A stretch of 64,000 nucleotides of DNA from the IMG/VR virus record IMGVR_UViG_3300042391_000634, positions 1-64,000 of that record; one strand, written 5' to 3'. Both the position numbers and the translations under genes were made by a program. This document shows positions 1,707 to 59,655 of the stretch, piece by piece; the stretch's first letter is position 1, and every line of letters begins with the position of its first letter. The notes below the pieces were generated by a model. The model searched no databases, was not told the DNA's origin, and saw only the letters and a program-made list of their open reading frames with translations.

Positions 1707-1707
1707 T

Positions 1708-2352
1708 ATGGCACAAGGGGCACATAAAATAACTGAGGACTTTGAAAACTTACTATGTGATTATACAGGATCACCTTATGCAATTGCTTTAGATAATATG
1801 AGTAATGCGTTGTTCTTATCATTATACTATGAAAAGAATATAAAGAAGAGTTTAACCACAACACATATTGATTGTCCATCTAACACATACCCATCGGTTC
1901 CTTGTGAAATTATTCATAATGGTTTTAAAGTAAATTTTATTCAATCAAACAGTGATAAAATAAAAGGACCATATACATTATATCCATCAAATGTAATTGA
2001 TTCCGCATTAAGATTCACGGCCGATATGTTCCAAAATGGAACACATATGTGTGTATCATTTACTGGCCCATATAAAACATTAAAATTAAGTAAAGGTGGT
2101 GCAATATTAACCGATGATTTTGATGCGATGATGTGGTTTAAACGAGCAAGATTTAGTGGTAGAAGAGAATGTTCATATCACGAAGATAATTTTGATATGT
2201 TGGGGTGGAACTTTTATATGATGCCAGAACTTGCTGCTAGAGGTATTTTAATGATGAGTCAATTCTATAATATAGACGGGACTAAAAAACATATTGAAGA
2301 TTTGGAATTAAGATATCCTGATTTATCTAAGTACGAAATATATAAACAATAA
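1708..2352 (+). CDS. DegT/DnrJ/EryC1/StrS-family PLP aminotransferase (short form, 214 aa)
   Basis: FE..L..YTG..YAIA, IDSA, SF...K.L.L..GGAILTDD, G.NFYM.E..AA.G. Shorter than typical family members. Confidence 0.8.
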   Translation: MAQGAHKITEDFENLLCDYTGSPYAIALDNMSNALFLSLYYEKNIKKSLTTTHIDCPSNTYPSVPCEIIHNGFKVNFIQSNSDKIKGPYTLYPSNVIDSALRFTADMFQNGTHMCVSFTGPYKTLKLSKGGAILTDDFDAMMWFKRARFSGRRECSYHEDNFDMLGWNFYMMPELAARGILMMSQFYNIDGTKKHIEDLELRYPDLSKYEIYKQ

Positions 2353-3311
2353 TGAACGATTTAATTTTTATTACAGCATATTGTGAAACTCAAAAACAAG
2401 AAGAGGTTTTAGAACGTTGTGTTAATTCTGTCATAAAATGTGGATACCACATTGCTTTATTATCACATTCACACATATCATTACACATTCAAAAAAAATG
2501 TCAATATTATATGTATGATTATAATAATGACATTTCTAAAGATTATAATTTATTTGGATACACGACATTTCAAATTAATAATAAACAAATACAATCCAGA
2601 TTTTTTAACAAAACATTTTATGGTTTTGCAATATATAGAATGGTCACAATGGCTTGTCAAATTGCAATAAACTTTGGTTACAAAAACATCCATCATATTG
2701 AGTACGATTGTGAATTATTAAACTCAAATTTAATAATTGAAAATAGTAAATTATTAGAAGAATACGATTCGGTGATTTATACCGATAATGGAGATGAAAA
2801 TGGATTTTTATTTGGATCGTTTAAATCTTTTAAAGTTAGTTCATTACCTGAAAAATATAAAAATTACGATAGAGATTTTATCGATAGTGAGATGAGAAAA
2901 CTAAATAAAACGTATTTGGAATATCTAACTAAAAAATTATTTATTGAATCAGGTAATGTGTTATTTAAGAAAGAACCAACAAACGAGGAGTTTAAAAGAG
3001 GTGATTATTTTAATCATAGAAATTTACATTTTACATTATATTATAATCCAGAAGATAAAACTTTAAATATTTTTTACAATGCTTTAGATTTAGGAAAGTC
3101 GGAGGAAATTACCGTAATAATAAATAAAGAAAAAATAGTTAAAATAATAACAAAACCTGCATTTTGGACCACAAGAATTTTAGGTTTATTTAATGAAATA
3201 ATACACGTTAGGGTGGACAATAATAGTAAAATTATTTACGAAATATCTTTTGATAATAAGTTCAGAGAAATTTTTAAAAACAAATCTTATATTTTAAATA
3301 ATGAAAAGTAA
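2352..3311 (+). CDS. Hypothetical protein, possibly glycosyltransferase-like
   Basis: 319 aa, coupled to the sugar genes; contains the acidic motif HHIEYDCEL. Confidence 0.45.
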   Translation: MNDLIFITAYCETQKQEEVLERCVNSVIKCGYHIALLSHSHISLHIQKKCQYYMYDYNNDISKDYNLFGYTTFQINNKQIQSRFFNKTFYGFAIYRMVTMACQIAINFGYKNIHHIEYDCELLNSNLIIENSKLLEEYDSVIYTDNGDENGFLFGSFKSFKVSSLPEKYKNYDRDFIDSEMRKLNKTYLEYLTKKLFIESGNVLFKKEPTNEEFKRGDYFNHRNLHFTLYYNPEDKTLNIFYNALDLGKSEEITVIINKEKIVKIITKPAFWTTRILGLFNEIIHVRVDNNSKIIYEISFDNKFREIFKNKSYILNNEK

Positions 3312-3768
3312 ATTTAACTTTTTCAGGGGGTATGTTGGAACATTAGATATAATGGATGGACAAACATATGCAACAGCATCGTTATATAACCCACATACAC
3401 TTACAAATGACGAAAGAATAGCACAAATCAATAGACGTCTTCAAATAGACGAAGAAATGTGTAATCAAGAAATCATAACTCATGAACAATATATGAGAAA
3501 TAGAGACATGTTAATTGAACAAGAAAGAATAAGAAGATTAGGAATGATAAATCATTCAAGGGAAACCGATAACCAAATTAGATTGTTTCAAGCAACAACA
3601 ACTGTAACCGTAAATCCAACACTATGGACTAAGGTTAAGATATTTGGAACAAGAGTTAAATTGGTTTTAATTGAAACTTGGAAGTTGGAACCTATCGGTG
3701 TTGTGGTGATGACACTGTTAGTGTCAGTTGTTACATTCATAGGTGTAATGAAATTATTCGGAGCATGA
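3301..3768 (+). CDS. FKF-leader protein (MKSKFNFFRG) with C-terminal TM helix
   Basis: ORF track; shared leader; hydrophobic IGVVVMTLLVSVVTFIGVM. Confidence 0.7.
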   Translation: MKSKFNFFRGYVGTLDIMDGQTYATASLYNPHTLTNDERIAQINRRLQIDEEMCNQEIITHEQYMRNRDMLIEQERIRRLGMINHSRETDNQIRLFQATTTVTVNPTLWTKVKIFGTRVKLVLIETWKLEPIGVVVMTLLVSVVTFIGVMKLFGA

Positions 3769-4037
3769 TAAAACCATTCAAATTTTTAACAAAATATGAA
3801 CATCATCGTTTTACTCCTTATTGTTGTTATGATAATGCAAAATTTATTATTGAAACTTTAATATCTACAGATGAATGGGAGACAACCATATTCCCAAAAG
3901 AATACCCACACGAAAATGGTGTATGGAGAGTTCTTTACATACAACGTGGAAGGAATAATTATCATTCCGTTGTTTGTCATGAACCAATAAATCCAGGATA
4001 CATAATTGAAAGATTTATAGTTAATATAGATTTATGA
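3765..4037 (+). CDS. FKF-leader small protein (MIKPFKFLTK)
   Basis: Start reassigned to the ATG at 3765 (ATGA overlap with the upstream stop). Confidence 0.7.
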   Translation: MIKPFKFLTKYEHHRFTPYCCYDNAKFIIETLISTDEWETTIFPKEYPHENGVWRVLYIQRGRNNYHSVVCHEPINPGYIIERFIVNIDL

Positions 4038-4357
4038 TTAGTAGATTCAAATTTTTGACGGATAATGATGAGGATGAAATTCCTGAAGGTTATATCAATT
4101 TAGAGAATGAAAACATTGCAACTTGGATTTGGGAAAGTTTAACACCACCATCAGACACATTATATTATATAGTTTCGGCAGATACTAATGGTATTATTGA
4201 ATTTTTAAGAATGTTTCCGTCAGAGATGATAGTCCCTGTGTGTTCCATTGTTGGTCCAAATGGTGTGGTTCATAACGGTGGAAACGAAGGAAATGGATGG
4301 GGATTTAATATTCAAACCGACCCAATTCACATAACATATTTAAGTTATAACCCATAA
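4034..4357 (+). CDS. FKF-leader small protein (MISRFKFLT)
   Basis: ORF track; ATGA overlap. Confidence 0.7.
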   Translation: MISRFKFLTDNDEDEIPEGYINLENENIATWIWESLTPPSDTLYYIVSADTNGIIEFLRMFPSEMIVPVCSIVGPNGVVHNGGNEGNGWGFNIQTDPIHITYLSYNP

Positions 4358-4514
4358 TATTTATAAATAAAACAAAAATGTCATCAAAATTTTTTAACAA
4401 TTCACAACAACCTAAAGTGGCTAAAGGAGATAAAAAACCAATACCAACTAAACCAATTAAGAACAATACTCAAATTAAGAAGACGGGAAGAGGTAAATAG
4501 GATATTTATATCTA

Positions 4515-5357
4515 ATGAGCGGATTAACAACAATTAAATTAAGTAGTGAAGATTTAAAGAAGGAACAAGAACGCCAAAGGAAACGAGGTAAATTGATACT
4601 TAAACAACTAAAAAAAGGTAAGGTTAAGGTTGTTGTTGGTCTATATGATGAAGATGGAACGGTTCCCGATATTATATTTCAATATCAAATACATGATGCG
4701 GAAGTTAAATCAATTGTTGATTATGCCAATGGAGATGTAAATTGTTTAATTATTTGTTTTTATGATGACATTGATATTTTTAACGAAGATGGTAGTGAAA
4801 TAACAGAAAAATTACCTCTTTGGTTAGTTTCAGAAATTGAGAACAAACTTGAAAAAAAGTTTGAACAATTCAATATTGAACTTAGATTTAACCAACAATC
4901 AGGCGGAGGGAAGAAACATATAGTTAATGAAGAAGTGAATGACGACGACCAAAGACTAATTAACAAAACTAGAGTTATTTATAAATTACTCAAAAAAGGT
5001 GGTAAAATGGGGTTCGACTCTGCACCATATTACCACGAAGTACATTGGACATTACCCAATAAATTTTACGTTAAAATTAAACATCATGATAAAAAGGATG
5101 CTGAACGTTATCAATTAAAAGTTGATAGTTATCCTATTTTATTGTTGAACACTGAAACTATAAATTACACCAAAACCAATGATAAACCATTGAGAAATGG
5201 TGAAAAACATTTAATTGCAGGTGAGATTACAACTCAATTTAAAAAATATGGAATAACTGTTTATTGGGGAGGAGAAGTTCCAAAATATTCTATTTTTAGT
5301 CCAAGATCAATATCTCCCGATGAAACGTATACTGAAGTAGACATCACTCCAAAATAA
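4515..5357 (+). CDS. Two-copy KALKKG-domain protein, putative head-internal protein
   Basis: TATTTATA at 4503-4510; repeats KLILKQLKKG and KTRVIYKLLKKG joined by an IVNEE linker. Confidence 0.65.
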   Translation: MSGLTTIKLSSEDLKKEQERQRKRGKLILKQLKKGKVKVVVGLYDEDGTVPDIIFQYQIHDAEVKSIVDYANGDVNCLIICFYDDIDIFNEDGSEITEKLPLWLVSEIENKLEKKFEQFNIELRFNQQSGGGKKHIVNEEVNDDDQRLINKTRVIYKLLKKGGKMGFDSAPYYHEVHWTLPNKFYVKIKHHDKKDAERYQLKVDSYPILLLNTETINYTKTNDKPLRNGEKHLIAGEITTQFKKYGITVYWGGEVPKYSIFSPRSISPDETYTEVDITPK

Positions 5358-5358
5358 A

Positions 5359-5390
5359 TTTGGATATTCCAAATGGGGGTTGTATATTTG
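5359..5390 (+). promoter_or_regulatory. Bacteroidota-type housekeeping promoter (-33 TTTG, -7 TAnnTTTG)
   Basis: TTTG 5359-5362, 20-nt spacer, TATATTTG 5383-5390; the near-palindrome TTTGGATATTCCAAA overlaps the -33 element. Confidence 0.7.
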
Positions 5391-5585
5391 TTCCATGAAA
5401 GTAAAAATAACAATTAAATACCACATAGAGGTTGGTAATGAGGTCATTGAGTGTGATTCACTTGAACAGGCTGAACGTAAGATGAAACATATGTCAGATG
5501 TTGATAAGTTTCTTATTAAGACAGAATTAAAGGGTGATGAAGTATTAAATCAATTTTTAATTGGTTAATAGGGTATTTATACCTA

Positions 5586-5909
5586 ATGAATAGAAAGGAG
5601 TATAGGAGACTATTACAGGACCCCAAATGGAAGATAAAGGCTTCCTTCATAAGAAAGAGAGATAACCACACCTGCGTCAGATGTGGGAAGAAATCAAATA
5701 GATTACAGGTTCACCATACCAAATACGAAGATGGTCTAATGCCTTGGGAGTATGATAATGATACTTTGGAGTCATTATGTTCTGGTTGTCACAAAAAAGA
5801 ACATAATATTAAACCTAAGAGAAAGTTTACACCAAGGAAGAAGAAAGAACCTAAATTACAAACAAGGGTTATTAAGATTAAACCGTTTGTTGATTCTCTT
5901 GTTCCCTAA
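5586..5909 (+). CDS. HNH endonuclease
   Basis: RDNHTCVRCGK...LQVHHTKY...LESLCSGCHKKEH; preceded by TATTTATA at 5574. Confidence 0.85.
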   Translation: MNRKEYRRLLQDPKWKIKASFIRKRDNHTCVRCGKKSNRLQVHHTKYEDGLMPWEYDNDTLESLCSGCHKKEHNIKPKRKFTPRKKKEPKLQTRVIKIKPFVDSLVP

Positions 5910-6138
5910 CCCTCAATTCGGTTTTAAAAATTTCAATCCATTCTTGTTTGGATTTACCTTCATGAATTTCAGGTATTTCTATTAGTCCTATTCCTCTTAA
6001 ACAACCTAATGTGTTGATAATGTGACTAGTGGTCATCCAAAAAATAGGTGTGTGCCTGCCGGTTGCTGTTTTCCATACCGTATTGTGTCTATCGTAATTG
6101 ACATCTATTTCCGTTCCTTTAAAAAATTTAAAATTCAT
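5878..6138 (-). CDS. FKF-leader small protein (MNFKFFKG), paralog of 12089-12301
   Basis: Shared pattern W.T..G...P....T..I.....L...G......G....EW..I...EL..R. Confidence 0.7.
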   Translation of the reverse strand: MNFKFFKGTEIDVNYDRHNTVWKTATGRHTPIFWMTTSHIINTLGCLRGIGLIEIPEIHEGKSKQEWIEIFKTELRVREQENQQTV

Positions 6139-6146
6139 ACATTGAA

Positions 6147-7499
6147 TTAATTAACGACAATTTCATTTATAGTTATTGTTCCATCTAAATTACCATTTAA
6201 CGCAAGGAAGGTTAGTTTATTATTAACCTTAAATACTTTTACATAAGCCGGTGTAATTTTAGGAATATCTAAACCTTTATTATAATCCCCCATAACACCA
6301 TTATTATTCTTCCAAAATAATTTATTAATGTTAAGTGAATTTCCAGTTTTTAAAAGTTTACCGGCCCATCCATGTAATATAATATCAGGATAACCATCCT
6401 TATCAAAATCGATAATATCAAATTCTCTGAATTGTAATTGGTCAAATGTATAATCTAATCTATTATTAGAAGGTGTAAAGTTTCCTTTACCGTCACTATA
6501 CCAAATTTCAATACCATTGTAATTTGTTCCCTCTGTTGCAATTGCCAAATCAATATTACCATCTTTATTAAAATCGGCGGCTTTAATTGATGTTGAACCT
6601 CTATCGTCTGTTTTAAATATACCAAGAGGACCTGGATCCTTATCTAATTTATATTTCCCAAGAGTTGAGTTATATGAAAAAATACTAACACTATATCTAT
6701 CGTTTGGTTTTTGAAATGTAGGATTAAAACCATAATCTCCTCTAACAATTTCAGGACGAGAATCTCCATATAAATCTTGAATTAAAACTGCACCGCCGGC
6801 TTTTCCACCATAGAAATCTGAAGGGTCAAATATGTTATTGTTTTCGGTAAATGAACCATTACTATTTTGTGTATATGAATGAAGACCAAGATAATTATTA
6901 CCTTTTGTTCCCATGTGTAACCCTATAACATCAATTAAACCATCATTATTAATATCACCTGAAGATACCGAATGATAAAAACTATTAACGGTTGATATGT
7001 TTGAAAATGAAACTTTACTCCCTTCTGTTTTCATTAAAATTAAATTACCAAATGGCCATGGTTGACCATTTAATTCAGGACCAGAATCTGAAAATACCCA
7101 ACTTTGTTTTGTGGTATCAATACAAGTGTAGTTTCTACCACAACCCATAGAAGCCTCAGGATAACTATTTTCATAAGACCAATTATTATTTGTTTTTGTT
7201 AAATGTAAAGTTGGTATTAATGGATATGTATAAAATAATGTTGCAGGTATAATCAAATGTTCAATGTTATCTTTTTGATATAAAATAACACCAGGTATTG
7301 CCAAATTAACACCTTTAGCCACTATGTCGTTTGTAAAGTTTGGAACATTAAAACCAGATATTACTGTGGTTGTTAATGTATAAGGTGAAGTAGGTGGGAT
7401 CACAACTACAGGAGGTTCAATAACTACAGGGGGGACTACAGATTCCTTCTTACAAGATATTATTAATAAAAATAATATAAAATATAGAGTTTTTTTCAT
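6147..7499 (-). CDS. Lipoprotein with FG-GAP/VCBS-like repeats
   Basis: Lipobox LLIISC followed by KKES; repeats GDINNDGLIDVI, DLYGDSRPEIV, ADFNKDGNIDLAI, IDFDKDGYPDII. Confidence 0.8.
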   Translation of the reverse strand: MKKTLYFILFLLIISCKKESVVPPVVIEPPVVVIPPTSPYTLTTTVISGFNVPNFTNDIVAKGVNLAIPGVILYQKDNIEHLIIPATLFYTYPLIPTLHLTKTNNNWSYENSYPEASMGCGRNYTCIDTTKQSWVFSDSGPELNGQPWPFGNLILMKTEGSKVSFSNISTVNSFYHSVSSGDINNDGLIDVIGLHMGTKGNNYLGLHSYTQNSNGSFTENNNIFDPSDFYGGKAGGAVLIQDLYGDSRPEIVRGDYGFNPTFQKPNDRYSVSIFSYNSTLGKYKLDKDPGPLGIFKTDDRGSTSIKAADFNKDGNIDLAIATEGTNYNGIEIWYSDGKGNFTPSNNRLDYTFDQLQFREFDIIDFDKDGYPDIILHGWAGKLLKTGNSLNINKLFWKNNNGVMGDYNKGLDIPKITPAYVKVFKVNNKLTFLALNGNLDGTITINEIVVN

Positions 7500-7586
7500 T
7501 TTTTACATTTATAGGACAAAAATAAGGATATTTTTTTGATATTCCAAATATATTTTATAATTTTAACAAAAAAATACTCTATAATA

Positions 7587-7618
7587 TTTGGAATATATTT
7601 AGTTTATACGTATATTTG
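7587..7618 (+). promoter_or_regulatory. Bacteroidota-type promoter driving the small-gene operon
   Basis: TTTG 7587-7590, 20-nt spacer, TATATTTG 7611-7618. Confidence 0.65.
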
Positions 7619-8123
7619 TGGTATATTAATTCTAAAACTTACATTACTATGTTATTTAAATACAAAATTACTTTAGATGTGGAGGTTGAGTTTGATGCTC
7701 CATTGTTGGGAACTGATACAACTAAAAACAAAAGAAAACAGGTGGATAGTATTGCAAAAAAAGCACTACAAGAAATGATTAATTTTAAAACAACATCTTA
7801 TGTTGGTGTTAATAGAGAAATTAATGATGAAAATTTAAAAGGTAATTACAAAGGTGAAATTATATTAAGGAGTGCAAAAATGTTTGAAGAAGACAAAAAA
7901 AAATAACATGGCAAAAAGACTAATCCAAAAGAAAATTATCTATCTTAAAACTTTATTAACAGAAACAAAAGGTTTCTTTAAAAGATTACAAATAAAGTTT
8001 TGGATTCGTAATGAAGAATGTAAACTAAAAAAATATAAGTAACATGATTGAAGTAATTGTAATTGGATTATACTATGTGTTAGTATTTTCATTATTAAGA
8101 TTTTTTCTAAAATTATTATCCAA

Positions 8124-9044
8124 ATGAGTTACATTTTAATTTACATAATAGGATTTATCTTAACACTAACATTCTTAAAGTTATATGGTAAGAAAATGGA
8201 GATTGATTATGATCCACCACATGATGAGGATTATGATGACTATAAAAATAATGCTGAGGCCTATCTATTCTTTTCATTGAGTTGGTTTGTAACAGCACCA
8301 ATGTTTATTGTTGTTGCAACAATTCAGTTGTTATATAAATTCACCCAATGGTTTATGAAATACCCAAACGTATAATATGACACTATTTTTAATTTATTGG
8401 ATACTAACAACAATATACGGAGTATATTGGTTGGTTAAACACCCATCATCAAGACATGGAGATGACAATGATGAATTTACATTATTGGAAGTTATTGCTA
8501 AAATTTTTCCAGCTGGTTTAATAGCTTGGGCAATTGTTCCAATGTTATTATTACATCAGGTTAAATTCAAAAGATAATGACCGACGCACAAATAGTAATA
8601 TCAGTAATTTTTGCTGTGATATTTTTCGTAATTCTTATTTTTAATGTGGTATCATACCCAAACGTGGAGTTATATAAAAAGAAATATGATGAATTGAAAC
8701 GTGGAGTGTATAAGTATGAACCAGATTATGGTGAATCACATTATTTTTATCTATACAGTTACGATATTCATACTCTAACATTTACTCGCACAGATGTTGA
8801 TATCATATTCTTTCTTGATGGTGATATAAAACTATCACATAACTTATACATACACAAAAGTCATTTGTTTATGTCATTAGTTAGTTGGTATTATTGGAGA
8901 AAGTTTCAAAAGTTAAAAGATGAATTGATTAACCAACATAATTTTAATGAGGCATATGCAAGATATAGATTAGGTTATTTGGAATCGTTACAAGAACAAC
9001 CTAAGAAACAAAACAAACTTACCTTCAAATTTTTTAGAGGATGA
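8124..9044 (+). CDS. Three small membrane proteins (8124-8375, 8377-8577, 8577-9044); the last ends in LTFKFFRG
   Basis: ORF track; hydrophobic N-terminal helices; tight gene spacing. Confidence 0.65.
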
Positions 9045-10541
9045 TAATACCATTTAAATTTTTTGTGGGGAAGGTTTATACCGATGAATTTGAATTTCCA
9101 AGAGTAAGGAGATCTCCAGAACATATAGGTAGAGGATATATTCAAACAATCTTACCGACCGAACCATATCTTGCAACACTACCAGAACCCAACTACGATG
9201 GATTTGTTATCAGTCGTGTAAGAACTAAAATGAGACGAAATATAAATTGGAGAGGATATGAAACTTCTATACAAGAAAGAAATGGTGAGGTAATAATATT
9301 AAAGATTGTAAGTGGTATAAACATTGGTGGAATGTTTCACATAGTTTATTTAATTACAAGAGACGGGAATACTGAAAATTATAGAGTAAGTGTCCCATTA
9401 GTCAATTTACAAAGAAGAGGATAATATGGCAAAAGCAAGAAAGATTTTATCAAACACTATAAGTGAATTGTTAAAAGAAACATCGTTGGAAACAAGAATT
9501 AAAATGTCATGTTGGTTTATGATTAACAATCTTATTCATGAATCAGGCGCAAGAGAAGAATCTGCGTGGGACGAAACAAATCCAAGAGATATTGAGATGA
9601 TGAAACTATTGGACGATAAAACAAAAGAACTAACGGAAACAATATTAAGAAACATTAAAGAATGGGAAGAAGATGGTAAACCAATTTAAATTTTTTGAGG
9701 GGAGACCAAAAAGATTATATCACTACGACCTATTGGTTGGGGGTATGCCTGTTGAGGTAATAACTTCAAACGAACCACCAACACATTTTTTTTCTGGTCC
9801 CACACAACATCATAGTTTTTATGTGGGAGTTCAAAATACACAATTAGAATTAATTTATGATGGCGATATGGATGAATTATCCGTTAGAGCAATGGTAGAT
9901 GAATTAAAATATAGATATATAAATTATATATCAATTAATGAACAGGTAATTGGATTTATGGAAGATTTTTTAAATGAACATTTAGATGGAACATCAACAA
10001 TAAGATACATATGATAAAACCTTTTAAACTACTTAATGGATACACATATATAAATGAGTTGCATGAACCATATATTCCGTTGCAGATAACACATGCACCA
10101 CCATTTGGTATATCACATCGTCATTGGAATATGTTGCCACGGGATTTGAGAGGTGGAACCCTAATACATATGGAAATATACATTGAGGGGTGGGAAGCTG
10201 GTCGCAATAATATCACCATCAATCCATATGAAGGTATCATCAATGACCCTGTGGTTACTGAATGGATTGAGTTGTGGAATAGAGGACATTTGAGGTGGTC
10301 TGGTAGAACAGGAATGAATTATGTTAATGTAAATCCCGACCCACCAATAGATGAAAGATATCCGGAATTCTATAACACAGATGAATTAATATTCTTTGAT
10401 GTAACGGAAGAAAGATTAGGTATGCTTGACGGTGAACCATATAAAGTTATGTTGTTCAGACATATTGAAGAGGGAAATACAATAGAAGGAGATACAATAT
10501 ATCCCGAACATCCAATGTATAATTTTCCTGATATAATTTAA
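9041..10541 (+). CDS. Small ORFs 9041-9424, 9426-9689, 9673-10014 and 10011-10541; three have FKF leaders and 10011 has an RMF-like motif
   Basis: Leaders MIIPFKFF, MVNQFKFF, MIKPFKLL; YIEGWEAGRNNITINPY...WIELWNRG in 10011. Confidence 0.65.
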
Positions 10542-11467
10542 AAAACAAAATAATATGAGATTAAACGTAGAATTACTTGCAATTGATTTTTACAGAGTAG
10601 GAAGAAGTTGGATTTCTATTTTAGAAATCAATTATGGTCACCCATTATTTTATATAGAATGGGGACAAGGTATGAAAATACAAATCAGTTTTTTATTTGG
10701 ACTAATTAAAAATTATTAATATGAAATTTGAAGAAGCGGAAGAAAAATCATTAACTGTAAAATGGGAAATAAGAACTTGCTCGCAAGGAGAAAAATGTTG
10801 GTGTAGAACAATCAAACCTATTGAACCCATACTTTTTGATGACGGGGGTCAAGATGAATATTGGATAGTTGGGTCTGGTGAGTTACATAAAAATATTGCA
10901 GAGTATTTTGTTGAACTCCATAATAAAAATATTGAAAATAAAATTAAATAATATGAAATTCAGAAAAACACTCACAGATAAACGTCTTGAAGAATTGTCT
11001 GATAAGGTAAGAAGAGGAACCCCAATCTTAATGAGTGAGGCGATTGAGGTAGTGGAATATCAAGAGATGTTAAAGAAGAATAAACTACCTTTCACAGATA
11101 GAATGCTTAATTTCTTTAAAATAAAAAAATAATATGAATATCATTTCAAACCCAAGCGATTTATTAAAACACTTATCCTTCTGGCATAACAAAACAGATG
11201 ACGAGTGTATTGAAATGGCAACAGGTGAATTTGGCGTTGATGCTGAACGAGCATTAATTAATATACTTGAAAGAGATTTCTGCACCAATATTAATAATAA
11301 TGTAATTGAAAAATTAAAAACATTATGACACCAAGAGAAAGAAAATATCACATAAACAAACGTCTTCGTAAATTACTTTGGGAAGAAATAACAAGAGTAA
11401 TTGATGAGGACATTGAAAATCAATTAAATGGTGGCAAACCTAATCTAGACATTCAACCAATGACAAT

Positions 11468-14400
11468 ATGAAAACATTTAAGTTCCTCTCAAAGAAACAA
11501 ATACAAGTTCCTATACCCAATAGATATAGTAGTTTAAGTCCTGAGGATAGAAACATATACACAAAAGGATATTATGATGCATTTGATTGTTATAATCATA
11601 GTCGTTCGTTAGAATCACCATACAATCCACTTGTGGAAGAATATGAGTATGAATTATGGAGAGAGGGAGTTACGATGTATGAACGAAATAATAATGCATA
11701 ATGATTAAGGACTTCAAATTTTTTCAAGGTAAAAAAGAAAGAATAAATTGGCAACTAACCGGTTTATTAGATGATGCAACAAATGTTCCATTATTGATTG
11801 GTGTATTGGACATCACATACAAATATATTCAGGATAATAATTTAATAGATAATAATAGGGTTAATAATATATTGATTATTGTTATGACCAAATTATACAG
11901 AGACAAATATAATTCTTATAGTGATTATGATATTAGACGTAAGATTGATGAGGTTGCGGTTCATACCAATAGTGTAACAATAAGAAGATACATACAAGAA
12001 CTTGAAGAGGGTGCTTGGATGAGTATTGATGTTGAAGCGGAGATTAATCATATTATTTATGAAAAATGTAAATGGGAAGAACATGACTATGGATTTTAAA
12101 TTTTTTAAAGGGACACCTCCACCTAAATGGAGAACATACGGTGGATTGATGCATCCATTGGAAACCATAAGCACAAATTATATCAAACGAATAATGAAAC
12201 TTTTGGTAACTAATGGTACATTGCCTAATCAAAAAGATGGGAGAACGGCAACCGAGTGGTATATTATATTAGATAATGAATTAAAAAGAAGAAATGATTA
12301 AACCATTTAAATTCTTTTCAGGGATAAAAATACAATATATTCTAATAATCACCAAGGATACCGATACAACGTACAGCATCCCATTAGATATGTATGGACA
12401 TATAATGGAAGTTGCGGTGGGTTTACACAGGGAGAATATGATATTATTTTCACCAGTAGAGTATAGAGTAGAAAACGAAATTGGTGAGGGAGTAACTTAT
12501 TTCTATATGATAAATAATATTGTACCATATTTTAATATAACTAATAGAATAATGATAGAATATAGTGTAAAGTTTCCTGATACAGAATATTATTGTGATT
12601 TTACCACTCAAGAAAATATATCCTTATATGAAACCATTTAAGTTCTTCCAAAATAATATAAAAAGAAAATGGTATTTAAGGAGTGACCACCTCGGTCAAA
12701 TACAATGGATGTATAGACCTGTGGGGGTAATATTCTATATGGAAAATAGATGGGATGGAAATTTTTATACAGAGGAGATGAAGACAATGACGGTGACGGC
12801 TACAAGTAGATATATGTACTCATACAATCAGTTTATGGAAATGAATAGGGATAATATTATATTTGCATATGAATTCGTGGACAATGCAGATATAAGTAAT
12901 ATGATACATTATAACGAAGATAATTTTGATGATATGCCAAGGGATAGACGACTAATATTTAGAGGAGTAATAAGAAATAATGAAACCATTTAAGTTCTTC
13001 CAAAAAGAAGATTATTTTCTTTCAATAGCAAGAAGAGGTGCGGGGAGAACCATCGCTCAAGACCTTGTGCCGGTTCAACCATTGGGCTCACCTGATAATG
13101 ACCTTCATATTCTTAGGAATTCACTATACGGTGCACTGCGTACAAGAGAATGTGCGGTAATTGCATCATCCATCCGAAATTTTAATAATTGGAGAAATGA
13201 AACATTTGACAGAAGTAGTGTTTTCATTATAACCAATAGAGATTTCACACATACTAATGGAAATAACAATCAAACCACAAGATACAGGGCAATAACGCGA
13301 ATTGATGATTGTTATGGACTAATGTTCGATGATTATATTTTAACGGATAGAATCCACGATATATTATCAAGCGGATATAATGAAACTATAGACCATATTC
13401 ACCAACTAGTTGATGAGGTTAACCTACACACAAGAAACAATGAAACCATTTAAATTTTTTAGAACCCCTTTTAACCCAAGACAATACGATCTTGATTCAT
13501 TTACATTCATCGGTGTTAGTCCCATTAAAACTCATGAAGATGTTCAAGGAAGGTATAGAACAATGATTTTTATGAATAATGATACACGTCTACCACTCAC
13601 TGGAAATTTAATACACGAACACGAGGAAGCATTCCATATGGCGGACATAATTGAAATAAGGGGAAATCAAATATTCCAATTACCAAGACAAGAGGCGGAA
13701 TATATAAACGTAACATTAACATTCACACCAAATGAAACCATTTAAGTTCCTAACCAAACCAAATACAATCAATTACGAAGGTGAGTGGTCACGACATGTT
13801 ATTGGAATAGTTTATGATTATATTAACAATAGATATAGAGACACATATATATCAGAAACATTTGATGCTAAATATATTATTACCGAAACAACATATGAAC
13901 TCGGACAATTATCACGTGCTGTTGTTAAAGTATATCCTAATAGAGATACTAACATGATAATAACATATTGGGTAACCGTGGTAAACACATTTGCATTCAT
14001 AACACAACATAATGTTGAACACTATGCGACCATTTAAATTCCTAAACGATAATAAGAAAGATGATTTTCTTATCCCAACGATGGATGAAATTGCTAACGC
14101 ATTAATTGTTGGAAGAGAAGCATATCTAAATGGACATCCGGTAGAATATAATCCTTTTTTAAGACAACAAACATTTGACGCATTTGACGAGGGATGGGAA
14201 TTAGAACATTCATATGATATATTAAGAGACGCACAACAAAGAGCAAACAATGGACTTTAAATTCTTTCAAAAACCAAAACCAATACAACCACCAGGTAAT
14301 ATGTATCTGATGTTTAATATGGATGATGCTCTAATCAATGTGATAAGATGGTTACAATATCATAATTGGGAAATATTAAATAGTGAAACATATATGTCTC

Positions 14401-15511
14401 AGGTGAATGTACCAATCAATAATTGTTTTATAAGGATAACGAGTTGGAGAAGACATATTAATCCACCAATAAGAGTTCAAATAAAATATAGTGTGTTTGA
14501 AGCAAACACATTTTCAAGAAATTTCACATTTATTATGAATGAAGAAGAATTTTTAAGAAGAATAGATATAACAGGAATATGATAAAAGAGTTTAAATTTT
14601 TAAGTAATAACAAATCAATAGGAACTAATACTATTCCATATCCTGATGATTTAGTATGTCCTTTAATGAGAGAGGTATATAAGGCTGGTTATTTATGTGC
14701 AATGGTGGGAAATCAGATAAGTGATAATCGTTACGCAAATACACAATATGCTTATATGTGGAATAGAGGTTGGATTGATTACCAAATGCAAACTGTAAAT
14801 GAGAGAGTTTAAGTTCCTAAGAAATCCTTTATTAGTTACCATTGATGGGAAATCAATCTATCCGGGGACATTATTCTATAGTATGAATAAGATATGTATA
14901 ATATTACCAAGGAAGATAACACCCAAATATACAATAGTAACAAGATGTATCCATCCAATTTATAAGGATGTATTCAAACCTGATTACGATACATTAATGT
15001 ATTTCAGCACAAAAGAATCTGCCGAGTTCTATAAGAGTAGATTAATACATTGGGATGAACACGTTATTGGTGGTGAGGTATTCCATAACAACGCTGACAT
15101 AACATTAACATTTAGAAGATGATAAGACAATTTAAATTTTTATCGGGAGTGAAATCCATGTTGGATATGTATGGTAGAGAAATCAACTCAAATAACTATA
15201 GAACCATCAGTATAACCGGCAATATTCGTTTTCTAAAAGAATACCATAGAAGATTGGATTGTATTTATATTTCACATTATAATATGTTTAATGAATATCA
15301 TCCATTATTTAATGAATCGGTAGATTTATATAATAGAACGGTTGGATTTATAGAAGGAGGTCACATAACAACCCACGAAGAGATAAGGAGATTTGTTCAT
15401 AGCGCCTATTCAGATATGGTATATGGGATATTTGACCAGTATGAAATAGGTGGGGCAACAAATCAGGAGATATTAGTTGATACATATAACTTTATAAACC
15501 CAAGACGATGA
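11468..15511 (+). CDS. Tandem operon of 13 FKF-leader ORFs (starts 11468, 11701, 12089, 12294, 12628, 12980, 13440, 13732, 14024, 14250, 14579, 14799, 15119)
   Basis: Each begins M-x(1-3)-FKF(F/L). After the first two genes, each start overlaps the upstream stop by 4-14 nt. Several starts were reassigned from the ORF track. Confidence 0.8.
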
Positions 15512-15549
15512 TAAAGATTTTAAATACCTGAAGATGATATTTATATAGG

Positions 15550-16395
15550 ATGAAATTAATGGATATATTATTAGAGGATTGGGAAGATGATTACCGAAAT
15601 GTATCTCATAAGCTTAAACTTATGTATAAATTACTTAGAGTAGGGTCGGTTAAAATTAGTAAATTAATACCTGATTTTGAGACACCATTTTGGACAGGAT
15701 TTGATTGGATTGAAGATGGTGATGCATTGATAACATATGAACTACCAAGCGAATATCATTTAATACCTGGTAGTATAACTAGCATATATAGAATAGTAAT
15801 AAGAGGTATAACTATTAATTGTGAAAAATATCCAGCGTTAGCTGATGACATAGATATTAGGGAAGATTTATTAAGATATATTTTACGTAGAATTGAAAAT
15901 TATCTAATACCTACACTCCAAGAGGGAGACGAAATTGAGTTTAGTATAAGAAAAAAACATGAAGAGAATATTATGTTTAAGAATGTCGTAAATGAAAGTG
16001 TTGTTGATGATAAAGAAAATGATTATGATACCGTTGTTAAAAAGGCACCAACAATTTTCAAAGCACTCAAGAAAGGTAAGATAACAATGGAGGTTGATGC
16101 AATAAGATTATTTTATCGAGGTGCAACGGACCCACAAAAATACACATTTGATTATGATTTAGGAGATGTATACATTGTTGAAACAGATCCATTTGAAAAT
16201 AACTACAATGTTAAAGTTTTAATACCGGCAATTAAAATTAACTGTGACGAAAACCCAAATTTAAATAATATTCAAACAATTAAAATGGACATTCTTAATA
16301 TTGTTAAGAAAAAATTTAACAACTTTGGATTGAACATTATTCTTAGAGCAACAAAATTTCGTTTAAAACATAATGGAAAGTGGATTATACCTTAA
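15550..16395 (+). CDS. CTS-like leader (MKLMDILLED) plus two KALKKG domains
   Basis: TATTTATA at 15538; KLKLMYKLLRVG and KKAPTIFKALKKG joined by a VVNES linker. Confidence 0.7.
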   Translation: MKLMDILLEDWEDDYRNVSHKLKLMYKLLRVGSVKISKLIPDFETPFWTGFDWIEDGDALITYELPSEYHLIPGSITSIYRIVIRGITINCEKYPALADDIDIREDLLRYILRRIENYLIPTLQEGDEIEFSIRKKHEENIMFKNVVNESVVDDKENDYDTVVKKAPTIFKALKKGKITMEVDAIRLFYRGATDPQKYTFDYDLGDVYIVETDPFENNYNVKVLIPAIKINCDENPNLNNIQTIKMDILNIVKKKFNNFGLNIILRATKFRLKHNGKWIIP

Positions 16396-16639
16396 TATAT
16401 AAATCCTCAGGTTTAGGTGGTTTTATTTCAAACACAACTGGTCTTTTCTTTTCCCATTTCTCTAAAATCTGTTGAGCCAAGGACACCATAGCCCTTTCAT
16501 AGTATTCCTCACCATATATTGGGACGATTATACTTTTATACATGTCTAATGTATCTGAAATGTTGAGACTATCAACTTTCTTTTTAACCGTGATGGTTTC
16601 ACTAAAATACTTATACGATAATGAGATTGGTATATTCAT
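16385..16639 (-). CDS. Hypothetical protein
   Basis: 84-aa ORF; upstream TATATTTG on the minus strand near 16644-16651. Confidence 0.55.
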   Translation of the reverse strand: MNIPISLSYKYFSETITVKKKVDSLNISDTLDMYKSIIVPIYGEEYYERAMVSLAQQILEKWEKKRPVVFEIKPPKPEDLYIKV

Positions 16640-16651
16640 TCCACAAATATA

Positions 16652-16690
16652 CTAGAATATTCTAGAATATCACAAATAAAGTTATCCACA
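16652..16690. promoter_or_regulatory. Palindrome CTAGAATATTCTAG plus perfect DnaA box TTATCCACA in a divergent intergenic region
   Basis: Palindrome at 16652-16665; DnaA box at 16682-16690. Confidence 0.55.
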
Positions 16691-16739
16691 TTTAAAATCG
16701 TGTTTTTAAATCTCGAATATTTTTATTATATTTAATGAT

Positions 16740-17162
16740 ATGTTGTCTAAATTTAGATTTTTCAGGGGTATAGTTAGTGCAAGGATTGTCAGTATTGATG
16801 GTGCTTTAGAAAGACTAACAAGGACACCTGTTAGTCATATTCCAATACCCGATACTCTTACAACCTTAGTAGAGATACAACAATTTAGGGCAGGATGGAG
16901 ATCGTGTGAGTTTGGAAGAAACATATACGATAATCCATATAGTAATAGAGAAGCTCTAATATATTCATTACATAGAGCATGGGAATATGGATTTACTGAA
17001 TGTTTTAATAATAGAAGAGTTAATAGAGATGAAGAGGTTTATTTAGAAGGATGGGCGACAGCTCAATTAGGGTTACCATTAAATGAAAACCCACACACAT
17101 ATGGTTCAAACCAATTTAATATGTGGTATATAGGATGGAATGACTTTGTTGATAATCATTAA
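16740..17162 (+). CDS. FKF-leader protein with two RMF/CrpP-like repeats
   Basis: FRAGWRSCEFGRNIYDNPY...AWEYGF and YLEGWATAQLGLPLNENPH...MWYIGW. Confidence 0.6.
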   Translation: MLSKFRFFRGIVSARIVSIDGALERLTRTPVSHIPIPDTLTTLVEIQQFRAGWRSCEFGRNIYDNPYSNREALIYSLHRAWEYGFTECFNNRRVNRDEEVYLEGWATAQLGLPLNENPHTYGSNQFNMWYIGWNDFVDNH

Positions 17163-17166
17163 AAAT

Positions 17167-17493
17167 ATGCGAGACTTCAAATTTCTTACCAAGAACGATA
17201 CAATAAACTTTCATGGACAAATGTCCATTGAAGCGCTCGGATATTTTGATGATTACGTTAATCGTATAATTAGATATGAAATCACAACAACAACCGCAAC
17301 ATATAAGATAGCAGATTACACTTATGGTGAAGGTAACGTTGTGGCGGGAACCGTCAACGCATATCCATTAGATGCTCCCAATATCATGGTCACCTACACT
17401 ATAAGGGGTGGAGAGATTACATCACATACAATACATATAGATTATTGGAATACGATGGGGCAATTGATAAATACAATAAGACGAGAGGATTAG
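17167..17493 (+). CDS. FKF-leader protein (MRDFKFLT), paralog of 13732-14037
   Basis: Aligns by eye: FKFLTK..TIN..G......G...DY.N... Confidence 0.65.
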   Translation: MRDFKFLTKNDTINFHGQMSIEALGYFDDYVNRIIRYEITTTTATYKIADYTYGEGNVVAGTVNAYPLDAPNIMVTYTIRGGEITSHTIHIDYWNTMGQLINTIRRED

Positions 17494-43965: not shown

Positions 43966-44069
43966 CCTCGTATACCCCCGTTCACAAGTTTCCGACGCCG
44001 GAACCCCCATTGAAATTTGTCCCTCTCTTTTTGTGTCCGTTAATAATAGTGGGATATTTATATGTGTAT

Positions 44070-50961: not shown

Positions 50962-50992
50962 TTTGAAATATTCTAAAATATACATATCTTTG
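50962..50992 (+). promoter_or_regulatory. Bacteroidota-type promoter
   Basis: TTTG 50962-50965, 19-nt spacer, TATCTTTG 50985-50992. Confidence 0.7.
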
Positions 50993-53328: not shown

Positions 53329-53330
53329 AA

Positions 53331-59624: not shown

Positions 59625-59655
59625 TTTGGATATTCCAATAATATCCATATCTTTG
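59625..59655 (+). promoter_or_regulatory. Bacteroidota-type promoter
   Basis: TTTG 59625-59628, 19-nt spacer, TATCTTTG 59648-59655. Confidence 0.7.

What the first reader, a model, noticed from the sequence alone, without database searches (positions are those of the whole stretch)
3301..17493. 22 unrelated small proteins share an N-terminal M-x(1-3)-F-K-F-F/L leader: candidate targeting or sorting system
Seen: leaders at 3301 (MKSKFNFF), 3765, 4034, 6138(-), 9041, 9673, 10011, 11468, 11701, 12089, 12294, 12628, 12980, 13440, 13732, 14024, 14250, 14579, 14799, 15119, 16740 (MLSKFRFF) and 17167. After about 8-10 residues the bodies are mostly unrelated, with only a few paralog pairs (6138/12089, 13732/17167). 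Synonymous variation (TTT/TTC, AAA/AAG) and conservative changes (K to R or N, F to L) suggest selection on the peptide rather than the DNA. These genes do not carry the TATTTATA motif; host-type promoters lie upstream of some of the operons. Inference: a shared address tag for an effector library (docking to a phage chaperone or hub, membrane or compartment targeting, or a timed degron). I know of no described system matching this leader.
Basis: partly seen in the sequence, partly recalled or inferred. Interest (0 to 1): 0.88.

Follow-up and report, generated by a model that had tools for sequence, protein, structure and literature searches.

The report
Phage N-terminal FKFF tag on lysine-free proteins
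An uncultured giant phage of Bacteroidota puts the same short N-terminal peptide (Met, 1-3 residues, Phe-Lys-Phe-Phe/Leu) on dozens of otherwise unrelated small early proteins, and those proteins alone have lost nearly all lysine after the tag, which suggests an undescribed way of handling a whole set of phage proteins through lysine.

Summary
All 22 ORFs start M-x(1-3)-F-[K/N/R]-[F/L]-[F/L], against 0.04 expected by chance. The window is the first 64 kb of a 335,630-bp IMG/VR jumbo-phage contig. The same leader heads 112 distinct proteins (33 BLAST families) in loci from about ten related contigs. Selection acts on the peptide: leader codon use matches background, the four core codons show synonymous:nonsynonymous 239:83 against 134:1132 for the next eight, and nothing is conserved upstream of ATG. 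In the one confident structure model the leader is a disordered tail. New result: leader proteins are lysine deserts. Lysine is about 2% after the tag against 9.9% in other ORFs (p=1e-9; p=2e-22 in relatives). It is replaced by arginine, the switch is sharp about 10 residues after the first Phe, and non-leader genes in the same operon are unaffected. Seventeen of the 22 genes lie downstream of two Bacteroidota-type promoters, so they are probably early. Best reading (inferred, about 0.35): a docking tag for one partner that acts on lysine, either a processing or turnover signal or a conjugation handle. It is not a T4-type capsid targeting sequence, a signal peptide or a DNA motif. Function is untested.

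The parts
3301..3768 (+). leader gene, MKSKFNFF, 155 aa, C-terminal hydrophobic segment
   Evidence: orthologue in L002 reads MINKFKFF
3765..4037 (+). leader gene, MIKPFKFL, 90 aa
4034..4357 (+). leader gene, MISRFKFL, 107 aa, no lysine after the tag
5878..6138 (-). leader gene, MNFKFF, 86 aa, 8 nt downstream of the FG-GAP lipoprotein gene 6147-7499 in the same minus-strand unit
7517..7618 (.). divergent pair of Bacteroidota sigma-A-type promoters (TTTG-N19/20-TAnnTTTG): 7548-7517 on the minus strand, 7587-7618 on the plus strand. They lie upstream of the units that contain 17 of the 22 leader genes.
   Evidence: 9 matches in the window against 2.3 expected
9015..9044 (+). start-less leader copy (KLTFKFFRG, then stop) fused to the end of ORF 8577-9044; a recombination or deletion scar
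   Evidence: analogous ATG-loss fusion in L058
9041..9424 (+). leader gene, MIIPFKFF, 127 aa
9673..10014 (+). leader gene, MVNQFKFF, 113 aa
10011..10541 (+). leader gene, MIKPFKLL variant, 176 aa, RMF-like motif
11468..11701 (+). leader gene, MKTFKFL, 77 aa
11701..12099 (+). leader gene, MIKDFKFF, 132 aa
12089..12301 (+). leader gene, MDFKFF (or MTMDFKFF from 12083), 70 aa, paralogue of 5878-6138
12294..12641 (+). leader gene, MIKPFKFF, 115 aa; AlphaFold2 pLDDT 84 with residues 1-7 below 50
12628..12993 (+). leader gene, MKPFKFF, 121 aa
12980..13453 (+). leader gene, MKPFKFF, 157 aa, no lysine after the tag; residues 13-98 resemble the N-terminal part of T4-type major capsid protein (Pfam Gp23)
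13440..13745 (+). leader gene, MKPFKFF, 101 aa
13732..14037 (+). leader gene, MKPFKFL, 101 aa, paralogue of 17167-17493
14024..14260 (+). leader gene, MRPFKFL, 78 aa, RMF-like (Pfam E 0.19), no lysine after the tag
14250..14582 (+). leader gene, MDFKFF, 110 aa
14579..14812 (+). leader gene, MIKEFKFL, 77 aa, RMF-like (Pfam E 0.02)
14799..15122 (+). leader gene, MREFKFL, 107 aa
15119..15511 (+). leader gene, MIRQFKFL, 130 aa
16740..17162 (+). leader gene, MLSKFRFF, 140 aa, two RMF-like repeats, no lysine after the tag
17167..17493 (+). leader gene, MRDFKFL, 108 aa

Best explanation
The 22 genes belong to an early-transcribed, rapidly recombining library of small accessory proteins in an uncultured jumbo phage of about 335 kb whose host is a Bacteroidota bacterium. 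Each protein carries a disordered N-terminal tag of 7-12 residues. Its core, F-K-F-(F/L), sits 1-3 residues after the initiator Met and is often followed by more lysines.

The tag is maintained by selection on the peptide and is portable: the same body occurs with different tag-proximal segments, and the same tag heads at least 33 unrelated bodies. Carrying the tag goes together with near-complete removal of lysine from everything about 10 residues beyond it, with arginine taking its place.

I infer that the tag docks all these proteins onto one common partner whose chemistry is directed at lysine. This could be a Lys-specific processing protease, or a ligase or acyltransferase that uses a lysine epsilon-amine. 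The lysine-free body would then confine the reaction to the tag. On this reading the tag is a processing, turnover (degron-like) or conjugation handle for a whole effector set, not a passive address.

Shown here: the tag exists, selection is at peptide level, the tag is disordered in one family, it is spread across the clade, the lysine desert is linked to the tag, and the promoter context is host-type. Inferred: that a partner exists, and that lysine chemistry is the reason for the desert.
For: Enrichment: 22 leader ORFs against 0.04 expected. There are 112 distinct leader proteins in 13 loci, with F 112/112, K 110/112, F 109/112 and F/L 112/112 at the core.

Peptide-level selection: leader codon use equals background (TTT 79% vs 74%, AAA 80% vs 69%; Leu encoded by TTA, TTG, CTT, CTC and CTA). 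Within families the four core codons show 239 synonymous against 83 nonsynonymous differences, and the next eight codons 134 against 1132. No nucleotide is conserved upstream of ATG.

Structure: AlphaFold2 of the 12294 family gives pLDDT 84, with residues 1-7 below 50.

Lysine desert: after residue 15, lysine has a median of 1.6% in the 22 leader proteins against 9.7% in 87 other ORFs (Mann-Whitney p=1e-9). This is replicated in 7 related loci (p=2e-22). Lysine is the only strongly depleted residue (0.21x) and arginine the most enriched (1.76x), while base composition is the same (A 38.1% vs 38.6%). K/(K+R) is 0.72-0.80 in the tag region, equal to the genome background, and 0.22 in the body. 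Of the 112 bodies (mean 101 aa), 25 have no lysine and 33 have one.

Link to the tag: non-leader small genes in the same operon keep lysine at 6-17%, so the desert follows the tag and not the operon or the time of expression.

Expression context: Bacteroidota-type promoters at 7517-7548 (minus) and 7587-7618 (plus) lie upstream of 17 of the 22 genes.
Against: No partner, protease, ligase or ubiquitin-like gene was identified in the window or in contig positions 64-92 kb.

The motif lysine is not absolutely required. In the 16740 family it is often N, R or T, and some members (for example P0211) appear to have no lysine anywhere. This fits general lysine avoidance better than an obligatory acceptor lysine.

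Disorder of the tag rests on one modelled family; the second model failed. There are no expression, proteomic or host data, because the phage is uncultured. Early timing is inferred only from promoter-like motifs.
Confidence: 0.35

Rival explanations
1. Capsid or prohead targeting, as with the T4 capsid targeting sequence (CTS). The tag would load a diverse set of small anti-defence proteins into the prohead so that they are injected with the DNA. The prohead protease would cut at the tag, and lysine-free bodies would survive a Lys-directed maturation protease.
For: The architecture is the same as the T4 internal proteins: diverse defence proteins that share only a conserved N-terminal CTS (PMC3012670). 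One leader family carries an N-terminal piece resembling T4-type major capsid protein (Pfam Gp23 in 13 of 24 members, best E 3.7e-7). A 335-kb phage has a head large enough to carry cargo.
Against: Leader genes lack the TATTTATA element that precedes the endolysin-like and structural-like genes. Seventeen of the 22 sit downstream of two host-type promoters. There is no L/I-x-E or other conserved cleavage motif after the tag. Cleavage after the motif lysine would leave a propeptide of only 4-6 residues. T4 internal proteins are, from my memory, lysine-rich, not lysine-free. No virion data exist.
Confidence: 0.12
2. N-terminal degron for a host AAA+ protease, of the ClpXP N-motif type. It would give early proteins a short, uniform half-life. 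The lysine desert would have an unrelated cause.
For: The tag is strictly N-terminal (1-3 residues from Met), disordered and basic-hydrophobic. It resembles the 'NH2-Met-basic-hydrophobic' class of ClpX recognition signals; this comparison is from my memory of Flynn et al. 2003 and was not tested. The genes appear to be early.
Against: It does not explain why lysine is purged only from tagged proteins. No similarity test against known degrons was possible.
Confidence: 0.12
3. A translation-level explanation. The leader would act as a nascent-peptide or early-elongation element in a host without Shine-Dalgarno pairing. Lysine codons would be avoided so that these proteins can still be made when a defence system such as PrrC or PARIS cleaves tRNA-Lys.
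For: AAA and AAG are depleted equally, about 5-fold and 4-fold in frame, as expected if the shared decoding step matters. tRNA-Lys cleavage is a classical abortive-infection mechanism (PMC12926258). Some family members have no lysine at all, leader included. Starts overlap upstream stops, so translation is coupled.
Against: Lysine is not avoided in the first 12 or so codons: K/(K+R) is 0.72-0.80 there, and a mean of about 2.6 lysines per tag remain. A ribosome stalled there makes no protein. Non-leader genes in the same operon use lysine normally. The equal depletion of AAG rules out AAA-specific mRNA interferases of the HigB or YafQ type.
Confidence: 0.1
4. Peripheral membrane or interface anchor. 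The cationic-aromatic N-terminus, which resembles the synthetic KFF-repeat permeabilising peptides, would hold the proteins at the inner membrane or another surface.
For: The tag contains 3-4 Phe/Leu and 2-3 Lys within 10 residues. One member also has a C-terminal hydrophobic segment. Small membrane proteins are co-transcribed at 8124-9044.
Against: The tag is too short for a stable anchor. The near-invariance of a 4-residue core suggests specific recognition. This reading gives no explanation for the lysine desert.
Confidence: 0.07
5. The conserved stretch is mainly a DNA-level recombination or gene-cassette boundary, comparable to the repeated boundary elements that shuffle small genes in T4-type hyperplastic regions. 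Alternatively it is simply the last conserved remnant of one very old paralogous family.
For: The cluster is mosaic. The same body occurs with at least 5 different tag-proximal segments. The same extension (KGxVYSDEYTL) occurs on unrelated bodies. There are whole-gene gains and losses between relatives, and start-less leader scars. Five upstream genes end in the next gene's leader (ATGAAACCATTTAA).
Against: Third codon positions are as free as in the bodies, and Leu uses five codons. Between nearly identical relatives the leader DNA is more diverged than the bodies while F-K-F-L is kept. Nothing is conserved outside the reading frame. Recombination at leaders is therefore probably a consequence of their repetition and not their function. 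Shared descent alone cannot hold AGA (Arg) against the G-to-A pressure of a 30% GC genome.
Confidence: 0.06

Closest known systems
T4 internal-protein capsid targeting sequence (CTS)
   Same: A short conserved N-terminal peptide is the only shared feature of a diverse, fast-evolving set of small phage accessory or anti-defence proteins clustered in a hypervariable locus (PMC3012670).
   Different: There is no sequence similarity and no L/I-x-E protease site after the tag. The genes sit behind host-type promoters, not the motif used by late-looking genes. The bodies are lysine-free. Packaging is untested.
Lysine deserts, with or without lysine clusters: ubiquitin-proteasome components, A chains of AB toxins, proposed Pup-proteasome avoidance in Actinobacteria and mycobacteriophages
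   Same: Long lysine-free stretches with Lys replaced by Arg, and the remaining lysines concentrated at the N-terminus. This architecture is interpreted as restricting lysine-directed conjugation (PMC13696103).
   Different: Here the genome is 30% GC, so composition bias cannot explain the desert. The host phylum has neither ubiquitin nor Pup-proteasome as far as I know. The desert is tied to a specific N-terminal motif.
Cargo-loading or encapsulation peptides of encapsulins and bacterial microcompartments
   Same: Short, portable, disordered terminal peptides that direct unrelated proteins to one protein shell. This comparison is from general knowledge.
   Different: No shell gene was identified, the sequences are different, and these systems have no lysine signature.
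N-terminal recognition signals of ClpXP, and N-degrons
   Same: They depend on proximity to the free N-terminus and have basic-hydrophobic character. This comparison is from memory and was not tested.
   Different: Known signals are loose and are not shared by dozens of paralog-free proteins. They give no explanation for lysine avoidance.
RiPP precursor families such as the prochlorosins (one conserved leader, many hypervariable cores, one enzyme)
   Same: The logic of one leader and many bodies, in which the leader recruits a single modifying enzyme.
   Different: The leader here is 7-12 residues, not 20-80. The bodies are folded domains of 50-180 residues. No modifying enzyme gene was seen.

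Membership tests
T4-type capsid targeting sequence | Conserved N-terminal peptide of about 10 residues shared by otherwise unrelated small phage proteins | tested here: met
T4-type capsid targeting sequence | Tag ends in a prohead-protease site (L/I-x-E in T4; S/A/G-x-E in phiKZ-like phages) | tested here: not met
   The position-specific residue counts show no conserved Glu or other fixed residue after F-K-F-F/L
T4-type capsid targeting sequence | Proteins made when proheads assemble and present in virions | tested here: inconclusive
   The TATTTATA element of late-looking genes is absent, and host-type promoters lie upstream. There are no virion proteomics.
Sec, Tat or lipoprotein signal peptide | Hydrophobic h-region of at least 10 residues after a basic n-region (twin-Arg for Tat, lipobox Cys for lipoproteins) | tested here: not met
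   Polar residues follow immediately after F-K-F-F/L. Compare the true lipoprotein signal of ORF 6147-7499.
Lysine desert (compositional class) | Long stretches without lysine that base composition does not explain | tested here: met
   25 of 112 bodies have no lysine and 33 have one (mean length 101 aa). Base composition equals that of the non-leader genes. p=1e-9 and p=2e-22.
Ribosome modulation factor (Pfam PF04957), for the subset 14024, 14579, 16740 | Score above the Pfam gathering threshold | tested here: inconclusive
   Window proteins score E 0.02 and 0.19, below the cut-off. Four of 24 homologues of 16740 carry a precomputed PF04957 hit.
T4-type major capsid protein Gp23 (Pfam PF07068), for the 12980 family only | Match to the capsid-protein profile | tested here: inconclusive
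   Only profile positions 8-89 of 376 match. Thirteen of 24 members hit, best E 3.7e-7, and the window protein scores 18.9 bits against a cut-off of 24.4. This is a fragment-like resemblance, not a capsid protein. The profile found no full-length capsid protein among 1.84 billion representatives.

The most novel reading that the evidence does not exclude
A clade of Bacteroidota jumbo phages runs a previously unknown lysine-directed protein-handling system. A heptapeptide N-terminal tag (F-K-F-F/L) delivers a diversifying library of early effectors to one enzyme that conjugates to, or cleaves at, lysine. The effectors have evolved lysine-free bodies so that only the tag reacts. This would be a prokaryotic or viral counterpart of degron-plus-lysine-desert logic, in a lineage with no ubiquitin or Pup.
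Probability: 0.3. Interest if true: 0.92.

Novelty: categorically new. Interest (0 to 1): 0.82.

Why it matters
Small early proteins of jumbo phages are mostly of unknown function, and nothing is known about how whole sets of them are regulated. A seven-residue tag that marks more than 100 unrelated proteins would make that question directly testable with peptide pull-downs, reporter fusions and mass spectrometry.

The lysine desert lies in a 30% GC genome, where mutation pressure favours lysine. It is one of the cleanest cases of selected lysine avoidance outside eukaryotes and Actinobacteria. It implies a lysine-directed activity, of phage or host origin, that has not been described in Bacteroidota-phage biology.

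If the tag proves to be a portable degron, processing signal or conjugation handle, it would also be a useful tool for Bacteroidota genetics. The tagged set includes ribosome-modulation-factor-like and capsid-protein-fragment-like modules, so it is a ready catalogue of candidate host-takeover or anti-defence proteins.

Tried and rejected
- **Fixed DNA or mRNA motif:** rejected.
- **AAA-specific mRNA cleavage (HigB or YafQ type) as the cause of lysine avoidance:** rejected, because AAG is depleted as much as AAA.
- **Composition or foreign origin as the cause:** rejected, because GC and A content are the same.
- **Hidden homology among the bodies:** BLASTP and hhalign found only three pairs and a weak shared RMF-like module.
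- **Known families:** Pfam and PHROGs gave nothing for the leader proteins except a weak RMF hit and a partial Gp23 hit. A PDB sequence search with the 12980-family profile found nothing meaningful. Foldseek of the confident 12294-family model against PDB found nothing at E<=0.001.
- **Structure:** AlphaFold2 of the 12980 family failed (pLDDT 36).
- **Cultured relatives:** none in GenBank phages. There was only a weak PA5oct structural-protein hit for ORF 55914.
- **Host identification:** the scan of bacterial genomes found no relative.
- **Search for the phage's real major capsid protein, to see whether it carries the leader:** a profile search of 1.84 billion representatives and a motif-based scan of IMG/VR returned only small leader proteins.
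- **Walk along the contig from 64 to 92 kb:** it found glycosyltransferases and unknown proteins, and no protease, ubiquitin-like, E1/E2 or tRNA-repair genes.
- **Literature:** searches found no description of this leader.

Full report
**1. What is there**

Twenty-two ORFs of 70-176 aa lie between 3301 and 17493, 21 on the plus strand and one (5878-6138) on the minus strand. Each begins Met, 1-3 residues, then F-[K/N/R]-[F/L]-[F/L]. In 100 first-order Markov simulations of the window the mean count of such ORFs is 0.04, with a maximum of 1. No further copy heads an ORF elsewhere in the 64-kb window or in contig positions 52-92 kb. A 23rd copy without a start codon (KLTFKFFRG, then stop) forms the C-terminus of ORF 8577-9044, 29 nt before the leader of gene 9041.

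**2. Where it comes from**

The window is the first 64 kb of IMGVR_UViG_3300042391_000634 (JGI Ga0453978_0000001), which is 335,630 bp, 30% GC and has no tRNA genes in the window. A 334-kb relative carries the same kind of cluster.

A scan of IMG/VR for one leader DNA variant found clusters of leader ORFs on further contigs of 97-324 kb. Protein look-ups added a 294-kb ENA scaffold. No GenBank phage is related and no bacterial genome holds a relative.

The host is probably in Bacteroidota, on two grounds. The window contains a lipoprotein with a Bacteroidota-style signal. It also has 9 matches to TTTG-N18-20-TAnnTTTG against 2.3 expected.

**3. The tag across the clade**

From 13 loci I collected 112 distinct leader proteins. 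Aligned on the first Phe:

| Position | Residues (count of 112) |
|---|---|
| -2 | K 63, R 19 |
| -1 | P 49, D 18, T 11, E 10 |
| 0 | F 112 |
| +1 | K 110 |
| +2 | F 109 |
| +3 | F 77, L 35 |
| +4 and +5 | Q/S/R/K/N/T, then G/K/N/D |

Single-linkage BLASTP of the bodies gives 33 families. hhalign of 24 family profiles gives no pair above 35% probability. Within the window only three body pairs are significant.

Three families are abundant in metagenomes, with 180, 54 and 24 clusters at 90% identity. In the 12980 and 12294 families the F-K-F core is invariant or nearly so while the 1-3 residues before it vary. In the 16740 family only the first Phe is invariant.

**4. Peptide or nucleic acid**

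- Codon use at the four core positions matches that of the bodies. TTT is 79%, 65% and 77% at the three Phe positions, against 74% in the bodies. AAA is 80% against 69%. Leu is encoded by five different codons.
- Among within-family pairs, the four core codons show 239 synonymous and 83 nonsynonymous differences. The next eight codons show 134 and 1132.
- Upstream of ATG no position carries more than 0.26 bits. There is only the mild A-richness expected for a host without Shine-Dalgarno pairing.
- Between the window and L058 the bodies are about 99% identical in DNA. The leader and the following 10 or so codons differ heavily, yet F-K-F-L is preserved with other codons.

**5. The tag is outside the fold and is portable**

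AlphaFold2 on a 23-sequence alignment of the 12294 family gives pLDDT 84 and pTM 0.77, with residues 1-7 below 50. The fold has no match in PDB. A second model, for the 12980 family, failed, so disorder is shown for one family only.

Within the 12980 family nearly identical bodies carry at least five unrelated segments between the core and the body. The extension KGxVYSDEYTL occurs on unrelated bodies. The C-terminal domain of that family also occurs directly after the leader, after an RMF-like module, or after another module, and the leader is first in all but three representatives (P0124, P0129, P0133), which may be truncated gene calls.

Start-less leader scars, an ATG-deletion fusion in L058 and whole-gene presence or absence between relatives show frequent recombination in and around the leaders.

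**6. New observation: a lysine desert tied to the tag**

- After residue 15, lysine has a median of 1.6% (mean 2.5%) in the 22 leader proteins and 9.7% in 87 other ORFs of the window. K/(K+R) is 0.24 against 0.71, with Mann-Whitney p=1e-9 for ORFs under 200 aa.
- Seven related loci show the same: medians of 1.0-2.6% against 6.7-11.4%, p=2e-22.
- Lysine is the only strongly depleted residue (0.21x) and arginine the most enriched (1.76x).
- In-frame AAA and AAG fall about 5-fold and 4-fold, while A content is unchanged at 38.1% against 38.6%.
- Of the Arg codons, 81% are AGA or AGG, one G-to-A transition away from Lys. They must therefore be held by selection in this AT-rich genome.
- The switch is sharp. 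Lysine frequency is 22% in residues 0-4 from the first Phe, 16% in residues 5-9, and about 2% thereafter.
- In the tag region K/(K+R) is 0.80, or 0.72 without the motif lysine, which equals the genome background. In the body it is 0.22.
- Of the 112 bodies, 25 have no lysine and 33 have one.
- Non-leader ORFs have 16% lysine in residues 2-6 and about 10% afterwards.
- Small non-leader genes in the same operon (7649, 8124, 8377, 8577, 9426, 10721, 11134) keep lysine at 6-17%. The few other lysine-poor ORFs in the window are short and doubtful.

The desert is therefore linked to carrying the tag. It does not follow from the operon, the time of expression or base composition.

**7. Expression context**

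The sequence G(A/G)TATTTATA lies 3-6 nt before the ATG of many non-leader genes. These include the endolysin-like gene at 62241 and ORF 55914, which weakly resembles a PA5oct structural protein. No leader gene has this motif.

A divergent pair of Bacteroidota sigma-A-type promoters, 7548-7517 on the minus strand and 7587-7618 on the plus strand, lies upstream of the units that hold 17 of the 22 leader genes. I infer that the leader genes are early and transcribed by host polymerase. This is inference from motifs only.

**8. What the bodies are**

Most have no detectable relatives outside this clade. Two leads emerged.

- The 12980 family matches the N-terminal 80 or so positions of Pfam Gp23, the T4-type major capsid protein, in 13 of 24 members with best E 3.7e-7. 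The matching stretch contains R-R-x-x-G-R-T-I-A-x-D-L-V-P-V-Q-P-L/M. From memory, this is the conserved stretch of T4 gp23 that contains the Gol peptide, which activates the Lit protease (PMC12926258 for Lit and Gol in general). That correspondence is a lead and was not tested.
- Several proteins (10011, 11468, 14024, 14579, 16740) share a motif like that of ribosome modulation factor. Pfam support is weak for the window proteins (E 0.02 and 0.19). Four homologues of 16740 carry precomputed PF04957 hits.

**9. Mechanism**

Any explanation must cover four facts:

- a 4-residue core that is nearly invariant at the peptide level;
- a strict N-terminal position on a disordered tail;
- portability over unrelated bodies;
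- lysine purged from the body only when the tag is present, with no avoidance inside the tag.

The reading that covers all four is that the tag docks the protein to one partner with lysine-directed chemistry. That partner could be a Lys-specific processing protease or a ligase or acyltransferase, and the body must not offer it lysines. I give this 0.35.

Evidence against it:
- No such enzyme gene was found in the roughly 92 kb inspected.
- In the 16740 family the motif lysine is often N, R or T, and some members have no lysine at all. This fits avoidance better than an obligatory acceptor lysine.

Rivals:
- **CTS-like head targeting (0.12).** The architecture is the same (PMC3012670). However, there is no protease motif, the genes lack the late-type promoter element, and there are no virion data.
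- **N-terminal degron for a host AAA+ protease (0.12).** It does not explain the desert.
- **Nascent-peptide effect plus lysine-codon avoidance against tRNA-Lys nucleases (0.10).** It is contradicted by normal lysine use in the first 12 or so codons and in neighbouring genes of the same operon.
- **Membrane anchor (0.07).**
- **DNA-level cassette boundary or mere paralogy (0.06).** Codon data disfavour it.

**10. Comparison with known systems and novelty**

The nearest architectural precedent is the T4 CTS. The nearest compositional precedent is the lysine desert with an N-terminal lysine cluster, described for ubiquitin-system proteins and toxin A chains and proposed for Actinobacteria and their phages (PMC13696103). 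In that last case GC content is a confounder that is absent here.

The leader fails the defining tests for a CTS (no cleavage motif) and for signal peptides (no hydrophobic core). It matches no curated family. I found no description of it in the literature searched.

I rate the combination of tag and tag-linked lysine desert in a Bacteroidota phage as categorically new. The caveat is that function is entirely inferred. If the CTS-like or ClpX-degron rival is right, it would be a new variant of a known kind.

Noticed in passing
window 4358, 4503, 5574, 15538, 18937, 21485, 40612, 41733, 42483, 42967, 45679, 46920, 48677, 55902, 59135, 62219 (+); 50657, 62200 (-): G(A/G)TATTTATA sits 3-13 nt before the ATG of many non-leader genes, including the endolysin-like gene at 62241 and ORF 55914, which resembles a PA5oct structural protein. 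It is probably a phage-specific middle or late promoter that gives leaderless or nearly leaderless mRNAs. The total count of 29 against 20 expected is only mildly enriched, but the placement is striking.
   Followed up: partly
window 15550, 18951, 19784, 21498, 21952, 41170, 42494, 44070, 46935, 48155 (all +): A second N-terminal motif class, M-K-L-[LMIQV]-[DS]-[ILTV]-[LIV]-x-E, heads at least 10 larger proteins (119-436 aa) with normal lysine content. Most lie behind the TATTTATA element, and the motif shows synonymous variation too. It may be a second tag or a shared N-terminal domain.
   Followed up: partly
window 5359-5390, 7517-7548(-), 7587-7618, 50962-50992, 59625-59655, 60732-60762: Bacteroidota sigma-A-type promoters (TTTG-N18-20-TAnnTTTG) number 9 against 2.3 expected. 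Several share an extended, partly palindromic -33 element, TTTGGATATTCCAAAT, which may be an operator.
   Followed up: partly
window 12980-13453 and homologues P0001-P0120, P0134, P0135: The N-terminal module R-R-x-x-G-R-T-I-A-x-D-L-V-P-V-Q-P-L/M matches the start of the Pfam Gp23 (T4-type major capsid protein) profile. It also occurs as free-standing leader proteins of 57-60 aa. It could be a capsid-protein mimic or decoy. From memory, this stretch of T4 gp23 contains the Gol peptide sensed by Lit.
   Followed up: partly
window 10011, 11468, 14024, 14579, 16740; P0123, P0126, P0136: An RMF-like module (G-[WY]-x2-[GA]-x(5-9)-N-P-[YF]-x(6-12)-W-x2-G-[WF]) recurs in several leader families and in fusions with other modules. 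This hints that part of the set targets the ribosome.
   Followed up: partly
window 9015-9044; L058 about 3290-3300 (reverse strand): These are leader copies that have lost their ATG and are fused in frame to the upstream gene. In L058 a 9-nt deletion removes the start of the orthologue of 14024. Both are scars of recombination or deletion at leaders.
   Followed up: yes
window 12641, 12993, 13453, 13745, 14037 (stop codons): Five consecutive genes end in (N)ETI or ATI followed by stop, because their TAA lies inside the next gene's leader (ATGAAACCATTTAA). The overlap is 14 nt, so translation is probably coupled.
   Followed up: yes
window 266-3311, 17546-18923, 52519-55590; contig 64-92 kb (L064, L074, L075): The phage carries a large set of sugar and small-molecule genes: BKACE (beta-keto acid cleavage enzyme), a hexapeptide acyltransferase, a DegT aminotransferase fragment, metallophosphatases, many glycosyltransferases, an epimerase, a PfkB kinase, a cytidylyltransferase and a UDP-galactopyranose-mutase-like protein. 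They may serve DNA or surface glycan modification.
   Followed up: no
window 4515-5357 and 15550-16395: Two weakly related 280-aa proteins with an internal two-fold repeat (LLKKG ... F-x-x-[FY]-[GN]-I) sit inside the leader cluster, each behind TATTTATA. They are conserved in the 334-kb relative (56% identity). They have no family match and could be candidates for a cluster-associated partner.
   Followed up: partly
window 6147-7499 (-): A 450-aa FG-GAP/VCBS-repeat lipoprotein with a Bacteroidota-type signal (…LIISC) is encoded by the phage. It is conserved next to the leader cluster in relatives (L062, L063), and a leader gene lies directly downstream.
   Followed up: no
window 4378-4500: A 40-aa, very basic ORF (MSSKFFNNSQQPKVAKGDKKPIPTKPIKNNTQIKKTGRGK) lies behind a TATTTATA element.
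   Followed up: no
window 5586-5909, 23673-24773, 44010-45380; L062 12965-14254: Several homing-type endonuclease genes are scattered through the region: HNH, an endonuclease VII-like/HNH fusion, and LAGLIDADG in a relative.
   Followed up: no
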